The position numbers were made by a program, and so were the translations under genes. From Octopus sinensis (taxonomy: Eukaryota), in contig NC_043022.1 of the NCBI RefSeq assembly GCF_006345805.1, forward strand, positions 11,594,001-11,658,000: DNA of 64,000 bases, given 5' to 3'. Of this stretch, positions 27,030 to 50,775 are shown piece after piece (the stretch's first letter is position 1; each line of letters opens with the position of its first letter). The notes below the pieces were generated by a model. It made no database searches, was not told the origin of the DNA, and worked only from the letters and a program-made list of their open reading frames with translations.

Positions 27030-27620
27030 GGCCCCCAAAGAACATTACTGTGAATAATTTAAATGAAAGACTCGAAAAGGTTTTACCAGGAAATGAACAT
27101 ACTTAAAAACCTATAAACTCTGTTGTTGATGACTCAGAAACTGTCAATTGCCCCATCGGCTTCTTAAACTTACTGGAGCCACAAGGAGCACCTCCTCATT
27201 GCCTTCAATTGAAAATAGGCACTCCAATCATACCTCTGTAAAAAAAATTTTCTCAACCAAAGATGTGCAATGGCACAAGATTTTTTGTAAAGAAATTAAC
27301 AAGAAATGTCATAGAAGCCACAATAATTTCTGTCTGTGGAAAAGGCAAAGATGCTTTTATTCCTTGCTTACCTTTGACACCTTCTAATATTCCATTCCAA
27401 TTCAAACGATTTCAATTTCAAATACGTCTGTCTTTTGCAATGTCTATTAATAAGTCTCAACATCAGACTTTAAAAGTTACTGCTTTGTAATTAGAGGAGG
27501 ACTGTTTTTTTGCACAGTCAGGTATATTTTGGGGCTCCTGGATGAGGACCAGGACAATCTTTTCATTTTCACCCCTACTGGTAAAACCTGAAACATTGTC
27601 TAAAAGGAATGGGACCAACA
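27030..27620 (+). mobile_element. Helitron RepHel PIF1-like helicase C-terminal remnant
   Basis: [47 protein letters not shown] (helicase motif FAMTINKSQGQTL). Confidence 0.8.
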
Positions 27621-28230
27621 AACTAAAATTTGCAGACTGAATAATAAATTTGAAGACTGAAATACTAAAGACCATAGATCAGAAGTTTATATGCACAAAC
27701 CTATACAATTCTTTACTGCTACAGAAGCTGAATGTGGGGAAGTAAGAAATGATTACATCAACATCGAAGAAAAGGATATAACGCAAATTCAGCTGCTGAC
27801 CCTGATGGATTCCTAGCAACCCTCCTCAAGTCAGGCAAAGGAGTCCTTACAAAACCATTGCAGATACTTTTTCATAGCTTCCTCACAAATGGTAAGCTCC
27901 TGGACAAACTAAAGGAGGTGTGATAAGTGTGGTGAAAAGGAGCGTAACAGAACAAGGAAAAGAATTAGAAGTGTAATTTGGTCTTACCTGCAGAGATGAA
28001 GCCGGATTCGCCTTGAGCCAACTTGCTAGCGTCTTGTCGTCTTGGCGTCGTTCTCGAGTCTGACTGCCCTATTGATGCCGCATGTGCGTTCTGTCTCTCA
28101 CTTCCGCTTCCGCCGGCGCATGCGCCCTGCGAGACCTGCAAGACCCACTTCCGCTCCCTCCCTCTCTGTCACACTCCCTCATCACCACACCACACGCCCC
28201 CCTGATCTATAGATCACTGAACCGGCTTCC

Positions 28231-29125
28231 TCACTCGCTCCCGCACCTGAAACTGGTTTCGTAGTCAGCCAACCAGGGAGGAGGGTGCCGCTCCCTCTGT
28301 GGTCGCAGTGCGACCCTAGGACTTGTTTCTGGCGTGTTGCTGCCGACCTCATCATCCTGTCTGTTGTTATCGTCTTGCCCACTGTTGCTTGTCCCATCCT
28401 CCGGGGCATGGACAATCCTCCGTATGTCCAAAACGTGGCGTGGCATACCATCTACCGAGACGTTATTCTTTGAATTTACGGAGGTTATTGTCCCCTTTCC
28501 CCATTGCGATGTACACCGTGCGTTTGGGGGTTTCACCCAGACTTCCTCCCCGACCTGCACGAAGGCGTGCTCTTCCTCTGCCCCGGGTCGCATTGATGTA
28601 GTACACGGATGCCTCCACTCGTACCTGAATATTGCCCTGTGTGGCACCGACTCCTCGACGATTGGGCCTCGTGTCCTGATCTGGGCGACATGTACAAAAC
28701 ACGGCCTCGACTGGTGAAATGTGACCCTCTCAGCCATGGCCTTGATGGTACGATGATGCCTTTCCACCACCCCGTTTCCACTTGGCCGGTATGCCGCCCT
28801 GAAGAAGCGGTTGACCTTCCACTCATCAAGCATTTCTCTCAGCGCCTCCAAGCGAAATGCAGTGCCGTTGTCCAGAAGCAGTTCATCCACGGGGCCTCGT
28901 TCCAGGAATATCTCGTTCAGCACTTTCGCAATTTCTTCTGCGGTTCCTGACCTCATCTCCCTCCATATGGCGAACCGCCCCGGTCCGCAGTCAACCATTG
29001 AGAGGTATGTCCCCTGCCGGTAGTGTGTTATGTCCACCGCCAGTCGTCTCCAGTCCTGGTCCACTGGAATACTTCCCGCTTCATGCACGACCGGAGCAGG
29101 GTCGATGGACTGGCACCTGTCACAA
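28231..29125 (-). pseudogene. Gypsy integrase (DDE core and C-terminal domain), frameshifted
   Basis: LAVDITHY, DNGTAF, GNGVVERHHRTIK; HHCC split by an indel near 29120; out-of-frame segment around 28650-28750. Confidence 0.9.
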
Positions 29126-30718
29126 ACTGCTAACCACTCTCCGCACGCTCTGTCTTGTTACGTCGGAGTCGACTTTTCTGGCCAGGAACAACGTCCTGTC
29201 CACACCCATGTGATGCATGGTGTGCAGTCTCCGCAACTCCGAGTCGCTCAGATGGCATACTGCAACTACATCCTGCTTCGCGTCCTCTGGCACTTGCAAC
29301 CAGGCTCGCTTAACCCTGGTCAGGACGTCTGCCCTGTTCTTCTCGGAAGGCACAAAGATCACGCTCAGCTTCAGATTGAACTCAGTGGTCAGTTCACGCA
29401 GTATCCCCAATCGACGCTTTACCAGCATCTCTGCAGCCCCTTTGGTCCGCACCCTCCGCTCATCGGTGATGACTGCCGTCGCCCAACCAAGTACAGTGGC
29501 TGAATCAGTCCTGATTTCTATGGTGTGCAACCCCCACTTCAAGGCTAGGTTCACCCCCTTCAGCACGGCTTCCAACTCCGCCACGTTGATGTGACTGCAG
29601 TCATCCATCTTCCTGAGCCAGGCTGCATCTTCCACCGTGACACCTCCCACTTCCAAGACAATCCCTATTGCGATGCTACTGGCGTCACACCATACGATCC
29701 CGCTCTTTGATTTGGAAACGTACCAGCTGCCCCTCACCGGGTCCTCTGCTCTTACTCTGACCAGGACTTCCTGCATCATGTCGATCGTCCTCTTCCCCAC
29801 TTTATCATTCCACTTCACTCCTTCGGCTCGTCTCTTGATGAAGCTGCATGCTGTCCGGAGCCAGCCTGCAATCGGGTAGTGTCCCACCAGCTTCCCACAC
29901 ACAGAGAACAGCTCCCATCTACTCATGCTGGCGCCCAGTTCAGGGATCTCATTCCCTCGCCGGAACACCAAGGCGCCGGCTTTGTCTCTCCATAGCTTGA
30001 GGCCCAGTGCAGCACCTCCCTCCATAGCCTCTGGCGGCTTGGCGATCAGTCCAAAACTCTTCAGGTGGCCTATGACCTCCGTTGCTGGTATCACGGTTTC
30101 ATCCACCAGAATGTCGTCGATGTATGAATTGGTGGCCCTTTTTACTCTGTCCACCTTCCCCAGGACGGCCTTGAGAATTGTTGCCATAATCTTCAGAGCT
30201 GAATTCAGCCCAAATCCCAAACTGGTCAGACAGTACGTCCGGCCCCTATACCTGACGAGCTGGTACCTCCATAGTTTCTCAGCCACATGAACCTGAAGGT
30301 ATGCCGACTTTAAATCGACAATCGTGGAGGCCCCCGCTGTCTGCCTCCACTCTCGCAAGGTGTCTCCGCAGACATCCGTGGCCTCGCCGCCTGTATGACA
30401 TGACACGTGGTCATTCAGCTCTCGGAAGTCGAGCACTGGCCTGACCTTACGCTTTGTGGGCTGTATCACCGCCATCAGTGGCAGGACTCCGCTCGCTTCT
30501 CTTTCCCAGGGGATCAGTATGCCCTCCTTAATCCACCGCTCCACCTCCCCCTCGAACTCACTTCTGGCATCTCCTTTTAGAGTATGCTGATAGCAGCCCA
30601 CTTTGTTCTTTAACATCGGGGCTCCCCTTCCAGTGCCACTCCACTGTCCACCTCTCGCCATCAAAGACAGCCCGAAAATCCTGGTCTTCAATGGTGTGCG
30701 CCGCATCCATTTCCTCAC
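29120..30718 (-). pseudogene. Gypsy reverse transcriptase and RNase H
   Basis: VRPVLDFRELN, DLKSAYLQ, YIDDILV, WCDASS, HINVAELEA, RTDSATV; indel near 30625 separates it from the protease. Confidence 0.92.
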
Positions 30719-31148
30719 GGTTGTCGTCGGTGCGTGGTGTCGCCCTACACGGCTTCCCTGCTAGCCCAAACGTTACGCCAGCCTCGTTGACGGTAACACC
30801 TCCCAGACGGGTGATCGCATCCATCCCCATCACCACGTCGATCTCGTCCACCAAGTGACCGACCACAATCGCTCGCAACGTCAGCTGCAGTCCCTGCACC
30901 ACGATCTGCGCATCCGTAACCCCTTCGCAGTGCACTTCTCTTCCGTCGACTGCCCTGACACTGCTTCCTCCACTCCACGTCTCTGCCACTTCTGTGGTCA
31001 TCAGGGTCGTCGTACAGCCCGTGTCCACCAGGGCTCGCGACATCTTCCCCTTCACCAGAATGTCGACCACAGGTAACGATGAGAAACGCGCCACTACTAA
31101 TCCAAAGGGACAACTACCGGCGCAGTAGTCTCCCGCGGTCCGTTTCCC
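30558..31148 (-). CDS. Gypsy aspartyl protease, reached from gag by -1 frameshift
   Basis: ALVDTGCTTTL and VVMGMDAI motifs; frame entered at the GGGAAAC heptamer. Confidence 0.85.
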   Translation of the reverse strand, partial: GKRTAGDYCAGSCPFGLVVARFSSLPVVDILVKGKMSRALVDTGCTTTLMTTEVAETWSGGSSVRAVDGREVHCEGVTDAQIVVQGLQLTLRAIVVGHLVDEIDVVMGMDAITRLGGVTVNEAGVTFGLAGKPCRATPRTDDNREEMDAAHTIEDQDFRAVFDGERWTVEWHWKGSPDVKEQSGLLSAYSKRRCQK

Positions 31149-31852
31149 TGCAGACACTCGCTGGCCACATGCCCCAGCTCTCGGCACCGGTAGCAAATCA
31201 CCTCGGGCTTGGGCGATGCGCAGTCACGGACCATGTGTGGGCCCTGGCACCGGAAACACTGTCCCTTAAACGACCGCACGCGTTCTTTCCCCAGCCCCTC
31301 TCCGTTGCTCCTAGCTGGGCCACTTTTCGACGTTGCAGTCGCTGCTACCGACGTCAACCTGCTGCACGACACCAGTACACGCGCCCGCGATATAATCTCA
31401 GCCATCGGCATCGAACGCACGTTCGGGAGCTTCTGTAGCTCGACCGACATGATGTCGGGAAAGCCGGTCACGAACGCTAACCTGACCGTGCGTTCTAGCG
31501 ACTCTCCCTCATATCCCGCAAGTTTTGCCAACTTTCTAAGCTCGCCGGCGAACACGTCCACCTGCTGTCCTGTCCACCTCATCCTACCCAGTCGAGTGTA
31601 CGCTTCGAACATTCCTTCCGCGAAGGCCTCCATAAGTCGGATCTCCACCTTGTCCGCGCTGCGTTGGTCCGCTTCCTCCATCTCCAGATATAACGCCAAC
31701 GCCGGGCCATCCAAATACAACGGCATAAAACTAGCCAGGTCAGCTATGCCGTGTAGCTTCGCCACCAACTTCACCCTCCTCAACCAAGCGACCACGTCGG
31801 TGTCGCTGCAAAACGGTGTTATAGGGTCGCGTGAAATCATAGCAGTCTGCAT
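31097..31852 (-). CDS. Gypsy Gag with two zinc knuckles
   Basis: Intact 251-aa ORF; CFRCQGPHMVRDC and CYRCRELGHVASEC. Confidence 0.9.
   Translation of the reverse strand: MQTAMISRDPITPFCSDTDVVAWLRRVKLVAKLHGIADLASFMPLYLDGPALALYLEMEEADQRSADKVEIRLMEAFAEGMFEAYTRLGRMRWTGQQVDVFAGELRKLAKLAGYEGESLERTVRLAFVTGFPDIMSVELQKLPNVRSMPMAEIISRARVLVSCSRLTSVAATATSKSGPARSNGEGLGKERVRSFKGQCFRCQGPHMVRDCASPKPEVICYRCRELGHVASECLQGNGPRETTAPVVVPLD
31100..31148 (-). promoter_or_regulatory. Programmed -1 ribosomal frameshift signal (gag-pol)
   Basis: G GGA AAC in gag frame, 7-nt spacer, hairpin GGGA-G-ACUAC-loop-GUAGU-UG-UCCC; -1 frame is the protease ORF. Confidence 0.8.
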
Positions 31853-31893: not shown

Positions 31894-31905
31894 GCCGAAA
31901 TAGCT
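31894..31905 (-). promoter_or_regulatory. Primer-binding site complementary to nt 1-12 of tRNA-Phe(GAA)
   Basis: Plus strand GCCGAAATAGCT abuts the LTR at 31906; identical to the 5' end of metazoan cytosolic tRNA-Phe; no TGG-type PBS present. Confidence 0.7.
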
Positions 31906-33453
31906 TGTGATAAGTGTGGTGAAAAGGAGCGTAGCAGAACAAGGAAAAGAATTAGAAGTGTAATTTGGTCTTACCTGCAGAGATGAAGCCGGATTCGCCT
32001 TGAGCCAACTTGCTAGCGTCTTGTCGTCTTGGCGTCGTTCTCGAGTCTGACTGCCCTGGTCGATGCTGCACATGCGTTCTGTCTCTCACTTCCGCTTCCG
32101 CCGGCGCATGCGCCCTGCGAGACCTGCAAGACCCACTTCCGCTCCCTCCCTCTCTGTCACACTCCCTCAGGAGGGAATAATATGCCCTGTCCATACAGGA
32201 GGAGGCAGAGTAGATGCTAAAAACTATATGCCTATCTCTCTGACCTCATACATCAGCAAAGTCATGGAACGAGTTCAGTATGTAAATAAAACCTTTTTCA
32301 CTGACATAAAGTGTTTTTTCATTATCGTCAAAATTTGCAAATTTCCTTTCTCACTTTCTCTCTCTCTCCTTCACTCTATCTGCATGCTGTGTGTGTGTTT
32401 GTATATGTGTCTATGTGCCTGTACTCACATGAGTGCATGTGTGTGTATTTTTTTTTACCACAATTAAAATATAAACAAGAGTGAGAAAAATTTAAAAAAA
32501 ACACAGCTTTGGAACAAAATACCTTGTGGTATTTGTCTTGCCTGAAATCTACAGATGATCCCTTGAGACTCTCACCAACATCAAATGCAGTAAACCAGAG
32601 ATTGATCCATGGGAAAACCCATGACTATCAACATAAACTGTGATAAAAATAAAACAATATTATTAGAATTAAAAACAAATGAGTTGATCTTATTGTTGCT
32701 GCTGTTTTTGTTTTGTTGTTGTTGCTGTTGTTGTTATCATTGATTTTGTTGTTTAGCTCCAGCCAGCTGAAACTGAGCAGATCTCTTCCTGTCAGGAACA
32801 TTCTGTTGTTTTTTTAAAAGAGACTGTACTATGATTTGACTTCTATTTCTAGCAGATCGAGTAAACTCATAAAGGGACCTTCAAATTGTTGTCATTATCT
32901 TGATGATAATGCCATTATTACCAGATATGAATTCCTGTGAACCTGAAACTTCATAAATAGAAAATAATACAACCCAAAACATAATGGATCCTTAGCAACA
33001 ATCTAAGACCAATCTCTACTCACAGATACCACACTCAAGGTACACACCAGGCTAGTTTCTTATCACAAAAGCAAAACTGATGTAAAAATTCCTCTTTCCA
33101 TAATGCATTTCACAAGAAATTATTTCCAGTATTGAGTCAAGTAAAATCACTGTAATCCATAAATACAGGCTTCTTTAAATGTGTTGGTGCCAGGTAAAAT
33201 GCATTTGTGCCAATGTTGCTTAAGTGCTCCTGTGCTGGTTCTATATAAGAAGTACCCAGCACACTGTAAAATGGTTGGTGTTGAAGTCATCTGACAGTAG
33301 ACATCCATGCCACAACACACAATTTTGAATCTGGAGCCCTCTGGCTGGATAGATCATGTCCAAGCCATGTCAGCATGGAAAACAGATGTTAAGCAATGAT
33401 GATGAGGAGGAGGATGATATATGTGTGTGTGTGTGTGTGTATGTGCGTGCGTA

Positions 33454-37024: not shown

Positions 37025-37068
<44 letters not shown>

Positions 37069-37625
37069 TATAAATTTGAAAAGGCATGTACAAGAGACAC
37101 ATGAATCAACTGAAAACAAGATTCGTTGAGAGCGAACCCAAGAGAATGGAAGAATCAGTGGAGTGGTTATATGATGCTTTTTAAATACCAATACCACTAC
37201 AGGTGATAGAACCCAGGTGCACAAGTGAAAGAATGAAAACTTATGGAGTTCCTGGCAGTAGATGCCAATGGAAAAAAATATTAATGTGTAACAAAGTAAA
37301 AAAAAACTCAAAAATGTGAGATGAGTGGATATGAAAACATATGTGTATTAAATATAAATTTGAAAAGGCATGTACAAGAGACACATGAATCAACTGAAAA
37401 CAAGATTCGTTGAGAGCGAACCCAAGAGAATGGAAGAATCAGTGGAGTGGTTATATGATGCTTTTTAAATACCAATACCACTACAGGTGATAGAACCCAG
37501 GTGCACAAGTGAAAGAATGAGAAAACGTATGGAGTTCCTGGCAGTAGATGCCAAATGGAAAAAATATTAAATGTGTAACAAAGTAAAAAAAAACTCAAAA
37601 ATGGGAGATGGAGTGATATAAAAAA
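37069..37625. repeat. About 270-bp tandem duplication
   Basis: 37069-37340 versus 37353-37625; differences are mostly 1-2 nt indels. Confidence 0.85.
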
Positions 37626-47848: not shown

Positions 47849-50775
47849 CATCATCATCATCATCGTTTAGCGTCCGTTTTCCATGCTAGCATGGGTTGGA
47901 CGGTTCTACTGGGGTCTGTGAAGCCAGAAGGCTTCATCAGGCCCAGTCAAATCTGGCAGTGTTTCTACGGCTGGATGCCCTTCCTAACGCCAACCACTCC
48001 GTGAGTGTAGTGGGTGCTTTTTACGTGCCACCCGCACAGGTGCCAGACAGAGCTGGCAAACGGCCACGAACGGATGGTGCTTTTTATGTGCCACCGGCAC
48101 GAGGGCCAGGCGAGGCTGGCAACGGACACGAAACGGGGCGGTGCTGGCAACGGTCGCGAAACGGAAGGTTCTCTTACATGCCACCGGCACTGGTAACACA
48201 TCTGCAATTTCCATTGATCGATTTCCATTCTGATCTTCACTTGCCTCAACGGGTCTTCACAAGTAGAGTTTCGACATGCCACCGGCACTGGTAACACATC
48301 TGCAATTTCCATTGATCGATTTCCATTCTGATCCTCACTTGCCTCAACAGGTCTTCACAAGTAGAGTTTTGTCCCCCAAGAAGGGAAGGTATGCATACGT
48401 AGGCTGGCTCCGTCCCAAGTAGAAGGCCACGGGTTATGGACTCACTTGTCCTGCCGGGTCTTCTCGCGCACAGCACACTTCCAGAGGACTCGGTCTCTAG
48501 TCATTTCCTCAGTGAGACCTAAAGTTCGAAGGTCATGCTTCACCACCTCGTCCCAGGTTTTCCTGGGTCTGCCTCTTCCACAGGTTCCCTCAACCGCTAG
48601 GGTGTGGCACTTTTTCACACAACTTTCTTCATCCATTCTCGCCACATGACCATACCAGCGCAAACGTCTCGCTTGCACACCACAACTGATGCTTCTTAGG
48701 TCCAGCTTTTCTCTCAAGGTACTTACACTCTGTCGATTATGAACACTGACATTACACATCCATCGGAGCATACTGGCTTCATTTCTTGCGAGCTTACGCA
48801 TATCCTCAGCAGTCACGGCCCATGTTTCACTGCCATGTAGCATGGCTGTTCGTACACACGCATCATACAGTCTGCCTTTCACTCTGTGCGAGAGGCCTTT
48901 TGTCACCAGCAGAGGTAAGAGCTCTCTGAACTTTGCCCAAGCTATTCTTACTCTACAGTTACACTTTCAGCACACCCCCCCCGCTGCTGACTTGGTCACC
49001 TAGGTAACGGAAACTATCAACTATTTCTAGTTTTTCTCCCTGGAAAGTGACGGAAGTTGGTCTCAGAGCATTTTCAGTGTTTATTGTTCCTGAGCATCTG
49101 CCACATACAAAAACCATCTTCCTAGTTAGCCTTCCTTTGATATTGCTGCACCTCTTATGTGTCCATAGCTTACACTTGGTGCACCTTATAGAGTTTCTAC
49201 CTACACCTTTTCTACAGATCGAGCAGGGCCATCTACCTGAAGGCATTTGTGATTTGTCTACCTTCCTACTGATTACGACTTTGGTTTTAGCTAGATTGAC
49301 TCTGAGGCCCTTCGATTCTAATCCTTGTTTCCACACCTGAAACTTCTCCTCCAGTTCTGATAGCGACTCAGCAATTAGAGCAAGGTCATCAGCATAGAGG
49401 AGCTCCCAAGGGCATCCTGTCTTGAATTCCTCCATTATTGCCTGGAGGACTATGATAAATAGGAGGGGGCTGAGTACTGAGCCTTGGTGGACCCTTACCT
49501 CTACCCAGAATTCTTCACTGTACTCGTTTCCAACCCTCACCCTACTAGCAGCGTCCCTATACATGGCCCGCACAGCTCTCACTAACCATTCATCTATCCC
49601 TAGTTTCCTCATTGCCCACCAGATAAGGGATCGGGGGACCCTGTCGAAGGCTTTCTCCATGTCAACAAAAGCCAGGTACAGGGGCTTATCTTTGGCTAGA
49701 TATTTCTCCTGCAGCTGCCTTACTAGGAATATAGCATCAGTAGTACTTTTCCCTGACACAAGCCCAAACTGCATCTCATCTAAACTAACTCTCTCTCTAA
49801 TTAGTTGGGCTATGACCCTCTCCGTAACCTTCATCACCTGATCCAACAGCTTGATACCTCTGTAGTTATTTGTATCTAGGGCATCACCTTTACCTTTGTA
49901 GCAGTTGACTATTATGCTGCTACACCAGTCATTGGGTATGACTCCTTTGTGTATCACCTGATTAACTATACGGGTGACTAGGCTATAGCCGACACTACCA
50001 GACATTTTGAGCATCTCTGCAGTGATTCCTGATGGGCCTGGGGCTTTTCCTGTCTTCATGCTTCTAATTGCCTTAGCTACCACGGAACTATCAACTCGGA
50101 TAGCTGGTCCCTCTGTTGGGTCAACATTCGGCAGACTCTCTTTATCCCATTCATTTTCTTTATTCAGCAACCTTTCATACTGGCATCTCCAAACCTCTCT
50201 CTTTGCATCCTCATTTAGTGCAAGTGAACCATCTTCCATGCGAACACACTTCTCTCCTACCACATCACTATTCTCTCTCACACACTATCTTGCAATGCGA
50301 AACACCTCCAGTCTTTGGTCCTCACGGCGCAGAACATTGGCAAATTTTTTCTTATCTGCTTCCCCTCTGGCTAAATAAACCTGTCTCCTAGCTTCTCTTT
50401 TGGCAGTCTGATACAATTCCCTGCTACCCCCATTTTTCCAGACCTTCCAAGCCTGTCTCTTTTCTCTAATAGCCCTGTCTACAATATTGTTCCACCACCA
50501 CGTTATTCTAGGTCGAGAGGGGACTTTGCACCAGCCACAGATCTGGTCAGTGGCTCTCAGCAGGTTGTCCCTTAGAAACGTCCAGCTGTCTTCTACCCCC
50601 TGTGATGCTCTATCCCCTTCTACTTCGTCAGAGGCTTCAAGTAATATGTCTCTAAATCTCTGTCCATTTGCAGGATCTTTAAGCTTCCAGATCCTTCTTC
50701 TCCATATTGGTCGTCTTCTGGTTGTCCTCCTAGTCCTGATCCTAAAGTCACTAACTACCAGTCTATGTTGTGGGG
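47849..50775 (-). mobile_element. RTE LINE, best-preserved copy, 5'-truncated, antisense in intron 1 of gene C
   Basis: 440-aa RT ORF 48959-50281 with YADD; C-terminus 48442-48906; 98-bp tandem duplication 48176-48370 in the 3' UTR; (CAT)n tail. Confidence 0.95.

What the first reader, a model, noticed from the sequence alone, without database searches (positions are those of the whole stretch)
31894..31905. Gypsy element apparently primed by a 5' fragment (nt 1-12) of tRNA-Phe
Seen: immediately inside the 5' LTR the element RNA reads AGCUAUUUCGGC, with no UGG of a normal PBS. Established: metazoan cytosolic tRNA-Phe(GAA) begins GCCGAAAUAGCUCAG, so the match is 12/12 and starts exactly at tRNA nucleotide 1. 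The geometry is right for priming, because the 3'-OH of nt 12 points into U5. Known exceptions use an internal half of tRNAiMet (copia, Ty5) or the element's own first 11 nt cut by RNase H (Tf1). Inference: a third route in which the 5' end of tRNA-Phe anneals and is cut after about nt 12, or a pre-existing short 5' tRF is used. A chance 12-mer match is about 4^-12 per site. I know of no description of this but cannot search the literature.
Basis: partly seen in the sequence, partly recalled or inferred. Interest (0 to 1): 0.85.

Follow-up and report, generated by a model that had tools for sequence, protein, structure and literature searches.

The report
LTR element primed by tRNA 5' end
A compact retrovirus-like mobile element in an octopus genome, and hundreds of relatives in marine invertebrates, carry a 12-base primer site that matches the first 12 bases of a host tRNA instead of its last bases, which points to an undescribed way of starting reverse transcription.

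Summary
AGCTATTTCGGC lies on the minus strand at 31894-31905. It directly abuts the last base of the 5' LTR of a 4.25-kb LTR retrotransposon and is the exact complement of nt 1-12 of metazoan tRNA-Phe(GAA).

- The same block sits at the LTR edge in a second octopus copy, in Argonauta and Aplysia, and in 16 metagenome relatives. Pol identity to the P0001 query drops to about 40%, and both flanks are unconserved.
- Other relatives carry different 12-mers at that spot. One complements human tRNA-Lys(CUU) nt 1-12 and one complements nt 1-12 of a eukaryote-type tRNA-Phe variant. By recalled sequences, one complements tRNA-Lys(UUU) and another resembles elongator tRNA-Met.
- In 58 of 85 loci the junction is present and shows such a 12-mer.
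- No locus has a canonical TGG site at this junction.
- Self-complementarity in the LTR is at chance level, so Tf1-type self-priming is excluded.

Best explanation: the 5'-terminal 12 nt of a host tRNA anneal and gain a 3'-OH by a cut after nt 12. By analogy with Tf1, the element's RNase H probably makes that cut.

The "Gypsy" label is not established. No precedent was found in the searchable literature. Priming itself remains untested.

The parts
31894..31905 (-). 12-nt primer-binding site AGCTATTTCGGC, complementary to tRNA-Phe(GAA) nt 1-12
   Evidence: Searches give position and uniqueness. Searches give the tRNA-Phe 5' sequence. Searches show conservation at the same place in relatives.
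31906..32169 (-). 5' LTR (begins TGAGGGAG.., ends ..TATCACA). It lacks the first 13 nt of the family's canonical LTR.
   Evidence: LTR alignment, coordinates, and the full-length LTR in the Octopus sinensis copy L085.
27919..28194 (-). 3' LTR. The canonical start TGTGGTGTGGTGA is at 28194-28182. Only 28181-27919 is duplicated in the 5' LTR.
28197..28203 (-). Polypurine tract AGGGGGG, the plus-strand primer site, 2 nt upstream of the canonical LTR start
   Evidence: The same ..GATCAGGGGGGA|TGTG arrangement appears in relatives.
28204..28215 (-). Palindrome GATCTATAGATC immediately 5' of the PPT, conserved as GATCnnnnGATC in the family
31097..31852 (-). gag ORF (251 aa) with one CCHC zinc knuckle
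   Evidence: zf-CCHC, E = 1.1e-6.
30612..31073 (-). Protease part of pol (frame -1), cut off from RT by a frameshift near 30612-30646
   Evidence: gag-asp_proteas / RVP hits, all three below Pfam's curated cut-offs. (tblastn to the intact 931-aa relative P0001).
29132..30646 (-). RT, thumb (DUF7047) and RNase H part of pol (frame -2)
   Evidence: DUF7047 1.2e-23, RVT_3, RNase_H, weak RVT_1.. Domain layout from the model.
28261..29124 (-). Integrase part of pol (frame -3), separated from RNase H by a second frameshift near 29124-29132
   Evidence: rve, 28.9 bits, below Pfam's 32.6-bit cut-off.. (retroviral integrases are the best PDB sequence matches).
27914..27918 (.). Target-site duplication, left copy (GGAGG on the + strand)
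32170..32174 (.). Target-site duplication, right copy (GGAGG on the + strand)
   Evidence: The joined flanks give a continuous ORF ..LDKLKE|GIICPVHTGGGRVDAKNYMPISL..

Best explanation
The 12-mer is the minus-strand primer-binding site of a compact LTR retrotransposon (two LTRs of 264 and 276 bp, gag, and PR-RT-RNase H-IN). The element belongs to a large, unnamed lineage of marine-invertebrate elements.

Shown:
- The site lies at the first internal base after U5.
- It is exactly 12 nt long.
- It complements nt 1-12 of a host tRNA: Phe in cephalopods and Aplysia, and Lys(CUU), a tRNA-Phe variant and others in relatives.
- There is no canonical TGG site and no self-complement.

Inferred mechanism:
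1. The Gag zinc-knuckle chaperone melts the acceptor and D stems of the tRNA.
2. tRNA nt 1-12 anneal to the site.
3. The tRNA is cut between nt 12 and 13, which creates a paired 3'-OH pointing into U5. The most likely nuclease is the element's own RNase H, as in Tf1, where RNase H cuts an RNA duplex after nt 11. Alternatively a pre-made 12-nt 5' fragment is recruited.
4. RT extends this primer to make minus-strand strong-stop DNA.
5. Later, plus-strand strong-stop synthesis copies the 12-nt RNA primer and runs off at tRNA nt 1. This would explain why the complementarity stops exactly at nt 1 and why the site tracks the host's tRNA sequence.
For: Position and boundaries.

Conservation with unconserved flanks:
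- The same 12-mer abuts the LTR in Octopus sinensis L085, Argonauta L001 (65% Pol identity, unrelated LTR), Aplysia L083 and 16 metagenome loci.
- LTR edges were confirmed independently by 5-bp target duplications in the window, L001, L039, L082, L083 and L084.

Census: 58 of 85 family loci show LTR(..ACA)|12-mer|0-60 nt|gag ATG. Most of the rest begin inside gag or pol and lack the junction.

Co-variation with real tRNA 5' ends:
- GCCGAAATAGCT matches tRNA-Phe.
- GCCCGGCTAGCT (L047) matches human tRNA-Lys(CUU).
- GCCTAGATAGCT (Oratosquilla L082 plus the metagenome loci carrying it; 11 distinct junction sequences) matches a eukaryote-type tRNA-Phe(GAA) gene in L119.
- GCCGAGGTAGCT (L040, L051) matches a tRNA-Met(CAU) gene in L101.
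- GCCCGGATAGCT (L068) matches tRNA-Lys(UUU) from my own knowledge.
- In L071 the otherwise invariant AGCTA becomes CGCTA, together with an elongator-Met-like acceptor strand.

The site type switches repeatedly on the Pol tree, as expected if it is recopied from the primer.

Self-priming is excluded. The RNase H catalytic motifs (DAS, AEL, TDS, AD) are invariant in the family alignment. The U5-site-leader RNA is unstructured, with z = +1.7.

Precedent: Tf1's RNase H cleaves an RNA duplex to make an 11-nt primer (PMC4600332 and the titles it cites).
Against: - No experiment shows the primer. Everything rests on sequence anatomy.
- A cut between U12 and C13 in the D stem has no known enzyme, and 12-nt 5' tRNA fragments are not a described class.
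- The tRNA genes of octopus, Oratosquilla and Nymphon were not read. For GCCGCGA, GCCGGGA and GCCGTGA, only bacterial- or phage-type tRNAs with those starts were found.
- The tRNA-Phe variant (L119) and the tRNA-Met (L101) come from viral-collection contigs, not from identified hosts.
- The main census pattern fixed AGCTA and G10, so conservation inside the block is partly by construction. The TSD-bounded loci, L005 and L071 are the unbiased subset.
Confidence: 0.72

Rival explanations
1. The 12-mer binds the tRNA 5' end for another purpose, and the true primer is a different molecule. The purpose could be selective tRNA packaging, a regulatory clamp on the leader, or protection from 3'-tRF silencing.
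For: The complementarity is real, but priming is not demonstrated. A D-stem cut is unprecedented. No other candidate primer site was excluded beyond TGG sites and self-complements.
Against: - The block abuts the last LTR base in every TSD-bounded copy, which is where the primer's 3' end must sit.
- Nothing else between the LTR and the gag ATG is conserved, and that interval is often 0-10 nt.
- The complementarity ends exactly at tRNA nt 1, as primer copying predicts.
Confidence: 0.13
2. This is Tf1/sushi-type self-priming, in which the first ~11-12 nt of the element's own transcript fold back on the site.
For: The site is short (12 nt, against 11 nt in Tf1), there is no TGG, and the site abuts the LTR.
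Against: - The reverse complement of the 12-mer is absent from the window at up to 1 mismatch.
- The best match in the window LTR has 4 of 12 mismatches.
- In 44 loci the best upstream match is indistinguishable from shuffles. The one exception, L081, has 1 mismatch.
Confidence: 0.03
3. The match is a chance resemblance. The conserved block would be an integrase, att or packaging motif that merely looks like a tRNA complement.
For: Positions 1-5 (AGCTA) are nearly invariant, as a protein-binding motif could be.
Against: - At least four different 12-mers each match the first 12 nt of a tRNA sequence seen here in a paper or in a fetched tRNA gene, 12 of 12.
- The variable positions are those of the acceptor stem.
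- L071 changes AGCTA to CGCTA together with a different acceptor strand.
- An exact 12-mer is expected about 0.008 times in 128 kb of sequence.
Confidence: 0.02
4. The site and tRNA are as proposed, but a host enzyme makes the 3'-OH rather than the element's RNase H. One candidate is tRNase Z-type recognition of a 12-bp helix, which has the length of the acceptor/T-arm minihelix. Another is a pre-existing short 5' tRF.
For: This is inference only. Twelve base pairs equals the acceptor plus T-stem stack that tRNA end-processing enzymes measure (established knowledge). Nothing in the sequence discriminates between the options.
Against: tRNase Z cuts one unpaired nucleotide beyond the helix, which would leave a mismatched 3' end. 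No 12-nt 5' tRF class is described. Tf1 offers a direct precedent for the element's own RNase H.
Confidence: 0.1

Closest known systems
Tf1/Tf2/Tj1 and sushi-group self-priming LTR retrotransposons
   Same: Both have a short site (11 vs 12 nt) abutting U5. In both, the primer would be the 5'-terminal 11-12 nt of an RNA, and the 3'-OH must be made by a cut at the end of an RNA:RNA duplex. In Tf1 that cut is made by the element's RNase H (PMC4600332).
   Different: Here the annealing RNA is a host tRNA acting in trans, not the element's own 5' end. No self-complement exists. Relatedness of the Pol proteins was not tested.
copia, Ty5 and Tca2 'half-tRNA' priming (from my own knowledge: Kikuchi 1986; Ke 1999; Matthews 1997)
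   Same: The primer is a 5' fragment of a tRNA produced by endonucleolytic cleavage, not the CCA end.
   Different: Those sites pair with an internal stretch (the D arm to anticodon stem, with a cut in the anticodon loop at about nt 39) of tRNA-iMet or tRNA-Arg. Here the pairing is with the extreme 5' terminus (nt 1-12) and the cut is in the D stem. Those elements also belong to a different superfamily (Ty1/copia, with IN before RT).
Canonical tRNA 3'-end priming (retroviruses, Ty3, gypsy)
   Same: A host tRNA anneals immediately 3' of U5. The site is probably recopied from the primer, so it tracks the tRNA.
   Different: There is no TGG. The site pairs with the opposite end of the tRNA, is 12 nt rather than about 18 nt, and needs cleavage. 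The copying stop would be the primer's 5' end rather than a modified base.
Odin retrotransposons and lokiretroviruses (PMC9040795)
   Same: Odin is an invertebrate LTR element without env. Like it, this family's Pol finds retroviral RT and IN as its best solved-structure matches.
   Different: Odin has a dual RNase H (a tether plus an acquired RNase H) and was found only in sea anemones. In the model here, RNase H follows the thumb directly with no tether.

Membership tests
LTR retrotransposon | Two direct LTRs with TG..CA ends, flanked by a short target-site duplication | tested here: met
   The LTRs are at 27919-28194 and 31906-32169. The TSD is 5 bp. Joining the flanks restores the host ORF.
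LTR retrotransposon | gag plus pol with protease, RT, RNase H and integrase, and a PPT before the 3' LTR | tested here: met
   Pfam hits, tblastn to an intact 931-aa Pol and the PPT AGGGGGG. In this copy pol is broken by two frameshifts.
Ty3/Gypsy (Metaviridae) | Domain order PR-RT-RH-IN, with RNase H directly after the thumb | tested here: met
   In the AF2 model the thumb helices span 395-452 and RNase H starts at 467. BEL/Pao shares this order, so the feature is not specific.
Ty3/Gypsy (Metaviridae) | Gypsy-type RT and RNase H sequence signature (strong RVT_1 with RT_RNaseH or RT_RNaseH_2) | tested here: not met
   RVT_1 scores only E = 0.004, 17 bits, below the cut-off. The RNase H hits RNase_H and RVT_3 instead, and DUF7047 is the strongest domain. 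The best PDB sequence matches are retroviral, and Ty3 is not among those listed.
Ty3/Gypsy (Metaviridae) | RT groups inside Ty3/Gypsy in a phylogeny with reference elements | not tested
BEL/Pao | Pfam Peptidase_A17, DUF1759 or DUF5641 signatures | tested here: not met
   None was reported at E <= 0.01 for any of the four ORFs.
Canonical tRNA-3'-end-primed elements | A TGG-initiated complement of a tRNA 3' CCA end within a few nt of U5 | tested here: not met
   The sequence after the LTR is AGCTATTTCGGCAAAATAATC... The same holds in relatives.
Tf1/sushi self-priming elements | A site complementary to the first ~11 nt of the element's own transcript (within the 5' LTR) | tested here: not met
Tf1/sushi self-priming elements | The primer is released by RNase H cleavage of an RNA duplex | not testable with these tools
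   This needs biochemistry. The RNase H catalytic motifs are intact in the family.
copia/Ty5 half-tRNA priming | A site complementary to an internal (anticodon-arm) segment of tRNA-iMet or another tRNA | tested here: not met
   The complementarity is to nt 1-12 and ends at nt 1.
Odin / retrovirus-type Pol | A tether (degenerate RNase H) between the thumb and an acquired RNase H | tested here: not met
   Only about 14 residues separate the thumb from the RNase H in the model. Model confidence is moderate (pLDDT 74).

The most novel reading that the evidence does not exclude
A whole, widespread lineage of metazoan LTR retroelements starts reverse transcription by a fourth route. The lineage comprises about 1,400 protein clusters at 50% identity. 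In this route the 5'-terminal 12 nt of a host tRNA (Phe, Lys, Met-like) are annealed in trans and cut out of the tRNA by the element's own RNase H. The 12-nt primer is then copied back, so the site automatically follows the host's tRNA sequence.
Probability: 0.55. Interest if true: 0.88.

Novelty: new variant of a known kind. Interest (0 to 1): 0.8.

Why it matters
Three ways of priming LTR-element reverse transcription are known: the tRNA 3' end, an internal tRNA half, and the element's own 5' end. A fourth way, using the tRNA 5' terminus, would link the tRNA-dependent and Tf1-type mechanisms.

Standard annotation tools search only for complements of tRNA 3' ends. If so, they would score this large invertebrate lineage as lacking a primer site.

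The mechanism predicts a new, very short class of functional 5' tRNA fragments and a D-stem cleavage activity.

These elements would also escape the 3'-tRF-based silencing that targets canonical primer sites. Each of these predictions can be tested with short RNA templates and a recombinant enzyme.

Tried and rejected
- tRNA genes: none in the window. In the family loci the only one is a tRNA-Val(CAC) near the Oratosquilla copy, and widening that locus to 22 kb found no tRNA-Phe.
- Literature: ten full-text searches used phrases for tRNA 5'-end priming, tRNA-Phe plus primer site, the 12-mers themselves, and Odin retrotransposons. None found a description of such a site.
- The Arabidopsis 5'-tRF-Asp/PBS paper concerns binding to canonical sites and is not a precedent.
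- Levin 1995 (PMC230564) is not held in the library.
- A scan of the viral collection for GCCG[C/G/T]GATAGCTCAG gave only phage- or bacterial-type tRNAs with various anticodons. It says nothing about the hosts.
- Odin or retrovirus membership was rejected because there is no tether domain.
- Foldseek on the whole Pol model is dominated by HIV and foamy-virus PR-RT entries and does not settle the clade.
- Folding of the U5-site-leader RNA showed no Tf1-like structure.
- L011 has a junction I could not resolve.

Full report
**Observation.** The window holds a 4.25-kb LTR retrotransposon on the minus strand.
- The LTRs lie at 27919-28194 (3') and 31906-32169 (5') and are about 97-99% identical.
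- The string AGCTATTTCGGC occurs once in the window, at 31894-31905 on the minus strand. With up to one mismatch allowed, 0.08 matches are expected.
- It begins at the first base after the LTR terminus ..TATCACA.
- The LTR edges are independently fixed by a 5-bp duplication (GGAGG on the + strand). Joining the two flanks restores one open LINE-like RT frame..LDKLKE|GIICPVHTGGGRVDAKNYMPISL...
- No TGG follows the LTR. The gag ATG lies 41 nt after the block.
- The complement GCCGAAATAGCT equals nt 1-12 of human tRNA-Phe(GAA) (PMC10505166) and of Drosophila tRNA-Phe(GAA) (PMC7038984).

The octopus tRNA-Phe gene itself could not be read.

**The element.**
- gag (31097-31852) has one CCHC knuckle.
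- pol has protease, RT, a strongly matching DUF7047, an RNase H of the RNase_H/RVT_3 type, and integrase.
- Against an intact 931-aa relative, pol in this copy is split by two frameshifts, near 30612-30646 and near 29124-29132. This copy is therefore defective.
- Close homologues are annotated in Octopus sinensis (90-97% identity). More distant ones occur in Argonauta, Aplysia, Plakobranchus, the mantis shrimp Oratosquilla, the amphipod Trinorchestia and the sea spider Nymphon. Many more sit on 3-5 kb metagenome and SRA contigs.
- A profile search finds 1,390 clusters (50% identity) at E <= 1e-30.

**Comparative test of the 12-mer.** I fetched 85 loci of the family.
- The exact 12-mer abuts the LTR in a second Octopus sinensis copy (L085), in Argonauta (L001: 65% Pol identity to the window's RT-RNase H ORF, unrelated LTR sequence), in Aplysia (L083) and in 16 metagenome loci. 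Pol identity to the P0001 query is as low as about 40%, and the sequence on both sides is unconserved.
- LTR ends were confirmed by 5-bp duplications in L001, L039, L082, L083 and L084.
- Other relatives have a different 12-mer at the same spot. Written as the complementary RNA, these begin GCCTAGA-, GCCGCGA-, GCCGGGA-, GCCGTGA-, GCCGAGG-, GCCCGGA- or GCCCGGC-, each followed by UAGCU. L071 has GCCTCGG-UAGCG.
- In all, 58 of the 85 loci show LTR(..ACA)|12-mer|0-60 nt|gag ATG. Most of the others begin inside gag or pol, and one (L011) is unresolved.
- Part of the census used a pattern that fixed AGCTA. The unbiased subset consists of the TSD-bounded loci plus L005 and L071, which were found by eye.

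**Are the variants tRNA 5' ends?**
- GCCCGGCTAGCT is the start of human tRNA-Lys(CUU) (PMC12140204).
- GCCCGGATAGCT is the start of tRNA-Lys(UUU), from my own knowledge.
- GCCTAGATAGCT is found in Oratosquilla L082 and in the metagenome loci of that type (11 distinct junction sequences in all). It is the start of a eukaryote-type tRNA-Phe(GAA) gene that I found in a viral-collection contig (L119).
- GCCGAGGTAGCT starts a tRNA-Met(CAU) gene in L101.
- The invariant UAGCU is tRNA U8-A9-G10-C11-U12, and the variable 7 nt are the acceptor-stem 5' strand.
- For GCCGCGA, GCCGGGA and GCCGTGA I found only phage- or bacterial-type tRNAs, so these remain unassigned.
- On a Pol tree the site type changes repeatedly. 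For example, the crustacean GCCTAGA element nests among mollusc GCCGAAA elements.

**Rivals.**
- Tf1-type self-priming is excluded. The best complement of each element's own site within 500 nt upstream has 4-5 mismatches in 41 of 44 loci, equal to shuffled controls. The window LTR's best match has 4 mismatches.
- Chance is excluded by the multiple independent 12/12 matches.
- One rival remains open: the block might bind the tRNA for some other purpose while an unknown molecule primes. Against this, nothing else between the LTR and gag is conserved, and the block sits exactly where a primer's 3' end must be.

**Mechanism (inferred).**
1. tRNA nt 1-12 anneal to the site.
2. A cut between nt 12 and 13 gives a paired 3'-OH facing U5.
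3. RT extends the primer.
4. Plus-strand strong-stop synthesis later copies the 12-nt RNA and runs off at nt 1. This fixes the site length at 12 and lets the site follow the host tRNA.

The nearest precedent for the cut is Tf1, whose RNase H cleaves an RNA duplex after nt 11 of the self-primer (PMC4600332 and the titles it cites). The family's RNase H catalytic motifs are invariant. The U5-site-leader RNA is not structured. All tRNAs used have A9, and m2G10, the only modification I know of in nt 1-12 of eukaryotic tRNA-Phe, does not block pairing (established knowledge).

**Classification.**
- The order PR-RT-RH-IN and an RNase H directly after the thumb fit Ty3/Gypsy-like or BEL/Pao-like layouts. 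The AF2 model has pLDDT 74.
- RVT_1 is below threshold, and no Gypsy RT_RNaseH or BEL/Pao signatures were reported at E <= 0.01.
- The best solved-structure matches are retroviral IN and RT.
- It is not an Odin-type element, because there is no tether domain, and Odin was reported only from sea anemones.
- "Gypsy" is therefore unproven. I treat the family as an unnamed DUF7047 lineage.

**Novelty.** Ten full-text searches found no description of a primer site complementary to a tRNA 5' terminus. The library lacks most subscription journals and Repbase, so an older note cannot be excluded. I rate this a new variant of a known kind (tRNA-fragment priming) and of high interest.

Noticed in passing
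window 28182-28194 vs 32157-32169: The 5' LTR of this copy starts at TGAGGGAG and lacks the first 13 nt (TGTGGTGTGGTGA) of the family LTR. Those 13 nt are still present upstream of the 3' LTR and in both LTRs of the Octopus sinensis copy L085. The target duplication is nevertheless perfect. This fits plus-strand priming, or integrase end-processing, at an internal TG/CA 13 nt inside the normal end, rather than a later deletion.
   Followed up: partly
window 28204-28215; L016, L022, L025, L028, L039, L082, L083: A small palindrome GATCnnnnGATC immediately precedes the polypurine tract (..GATCAGGGGGGA|TGTG..) across distant family members. Its function is unknown. It may be a hairpin that positions the PPT cut.
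   Followed up: no
window 27600-27918 and 32175-32470 (+ strand): The element is inserted in the reading frame of a LINE-like reverse transcriptase (motif ..NYMPISLTS..). The joined flanks give one continuous ORF. Pfam did not score this short stretch.
   Followed up: partly
window 48959-50281 (-): A second, unrelated 440-aa RT ORF. RVT_1 scores E = 2e-31. It is followed by a PHD-finger-like match (23.0 bits, just below Pfam's 24-bit cut-off) and is probably a non-LTR retrotransposon.
   Followed up: no
L003, L004, L007, L012, L015, L036, L040, L053, L056-L058, L064, L071 and others: Many 3.5-4.7 kb metagenome contigs of the family have identical 90-160-nt ends that lie inside coding sequence, so they assemble as circles of 'internal region + one LTR'. 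Collapse of the two LTRs during assembly is the simplest cause. One-LTR circles are the alternative.
   Followed up: no
L001 1465-1490 and 5520-5540 (Argonauta hians): In this young copy (LTRs 100% identical) the LTR ends ..TCAAG, not ..CA. The extra AG repeats the first two bases of the site, and the 5-bp duplication (TCAGT) follows it. This could reflect where the RNA primer is removed.
   Followed up: no
L082 595-667 / L166 8095-8167 (Oratosquilla oratoria): A tRNA-Val(CAC) gene lies about 200 bp upstream of the 5' LTR of the mantis-shrimp copy. No other bounded copy has a tRNA gene nearby, so this is probably a coincidence.
   Followed up: partly
L119 1634-2510: A viral-collection contig (134 kb) carries a cluster of four tRNA genes (Thr, Ser, Phe, Ser). 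It includes a eukaryote-type tRNA-Phe(GAA) that starts GCCTAGATAGCT. Whether the contig is a giant virus or misfiled host DNA is unknown.
   Followed up: no
window 37068-37624: Two copies of a ~285-bp unit lie in tandem (99% and 86% identical segments). The neighbourhood (24.9-26.8 kb and 36.7-38.0 kb) is rich in TA, TGTA and CA microsatellites.
   Followed up: no
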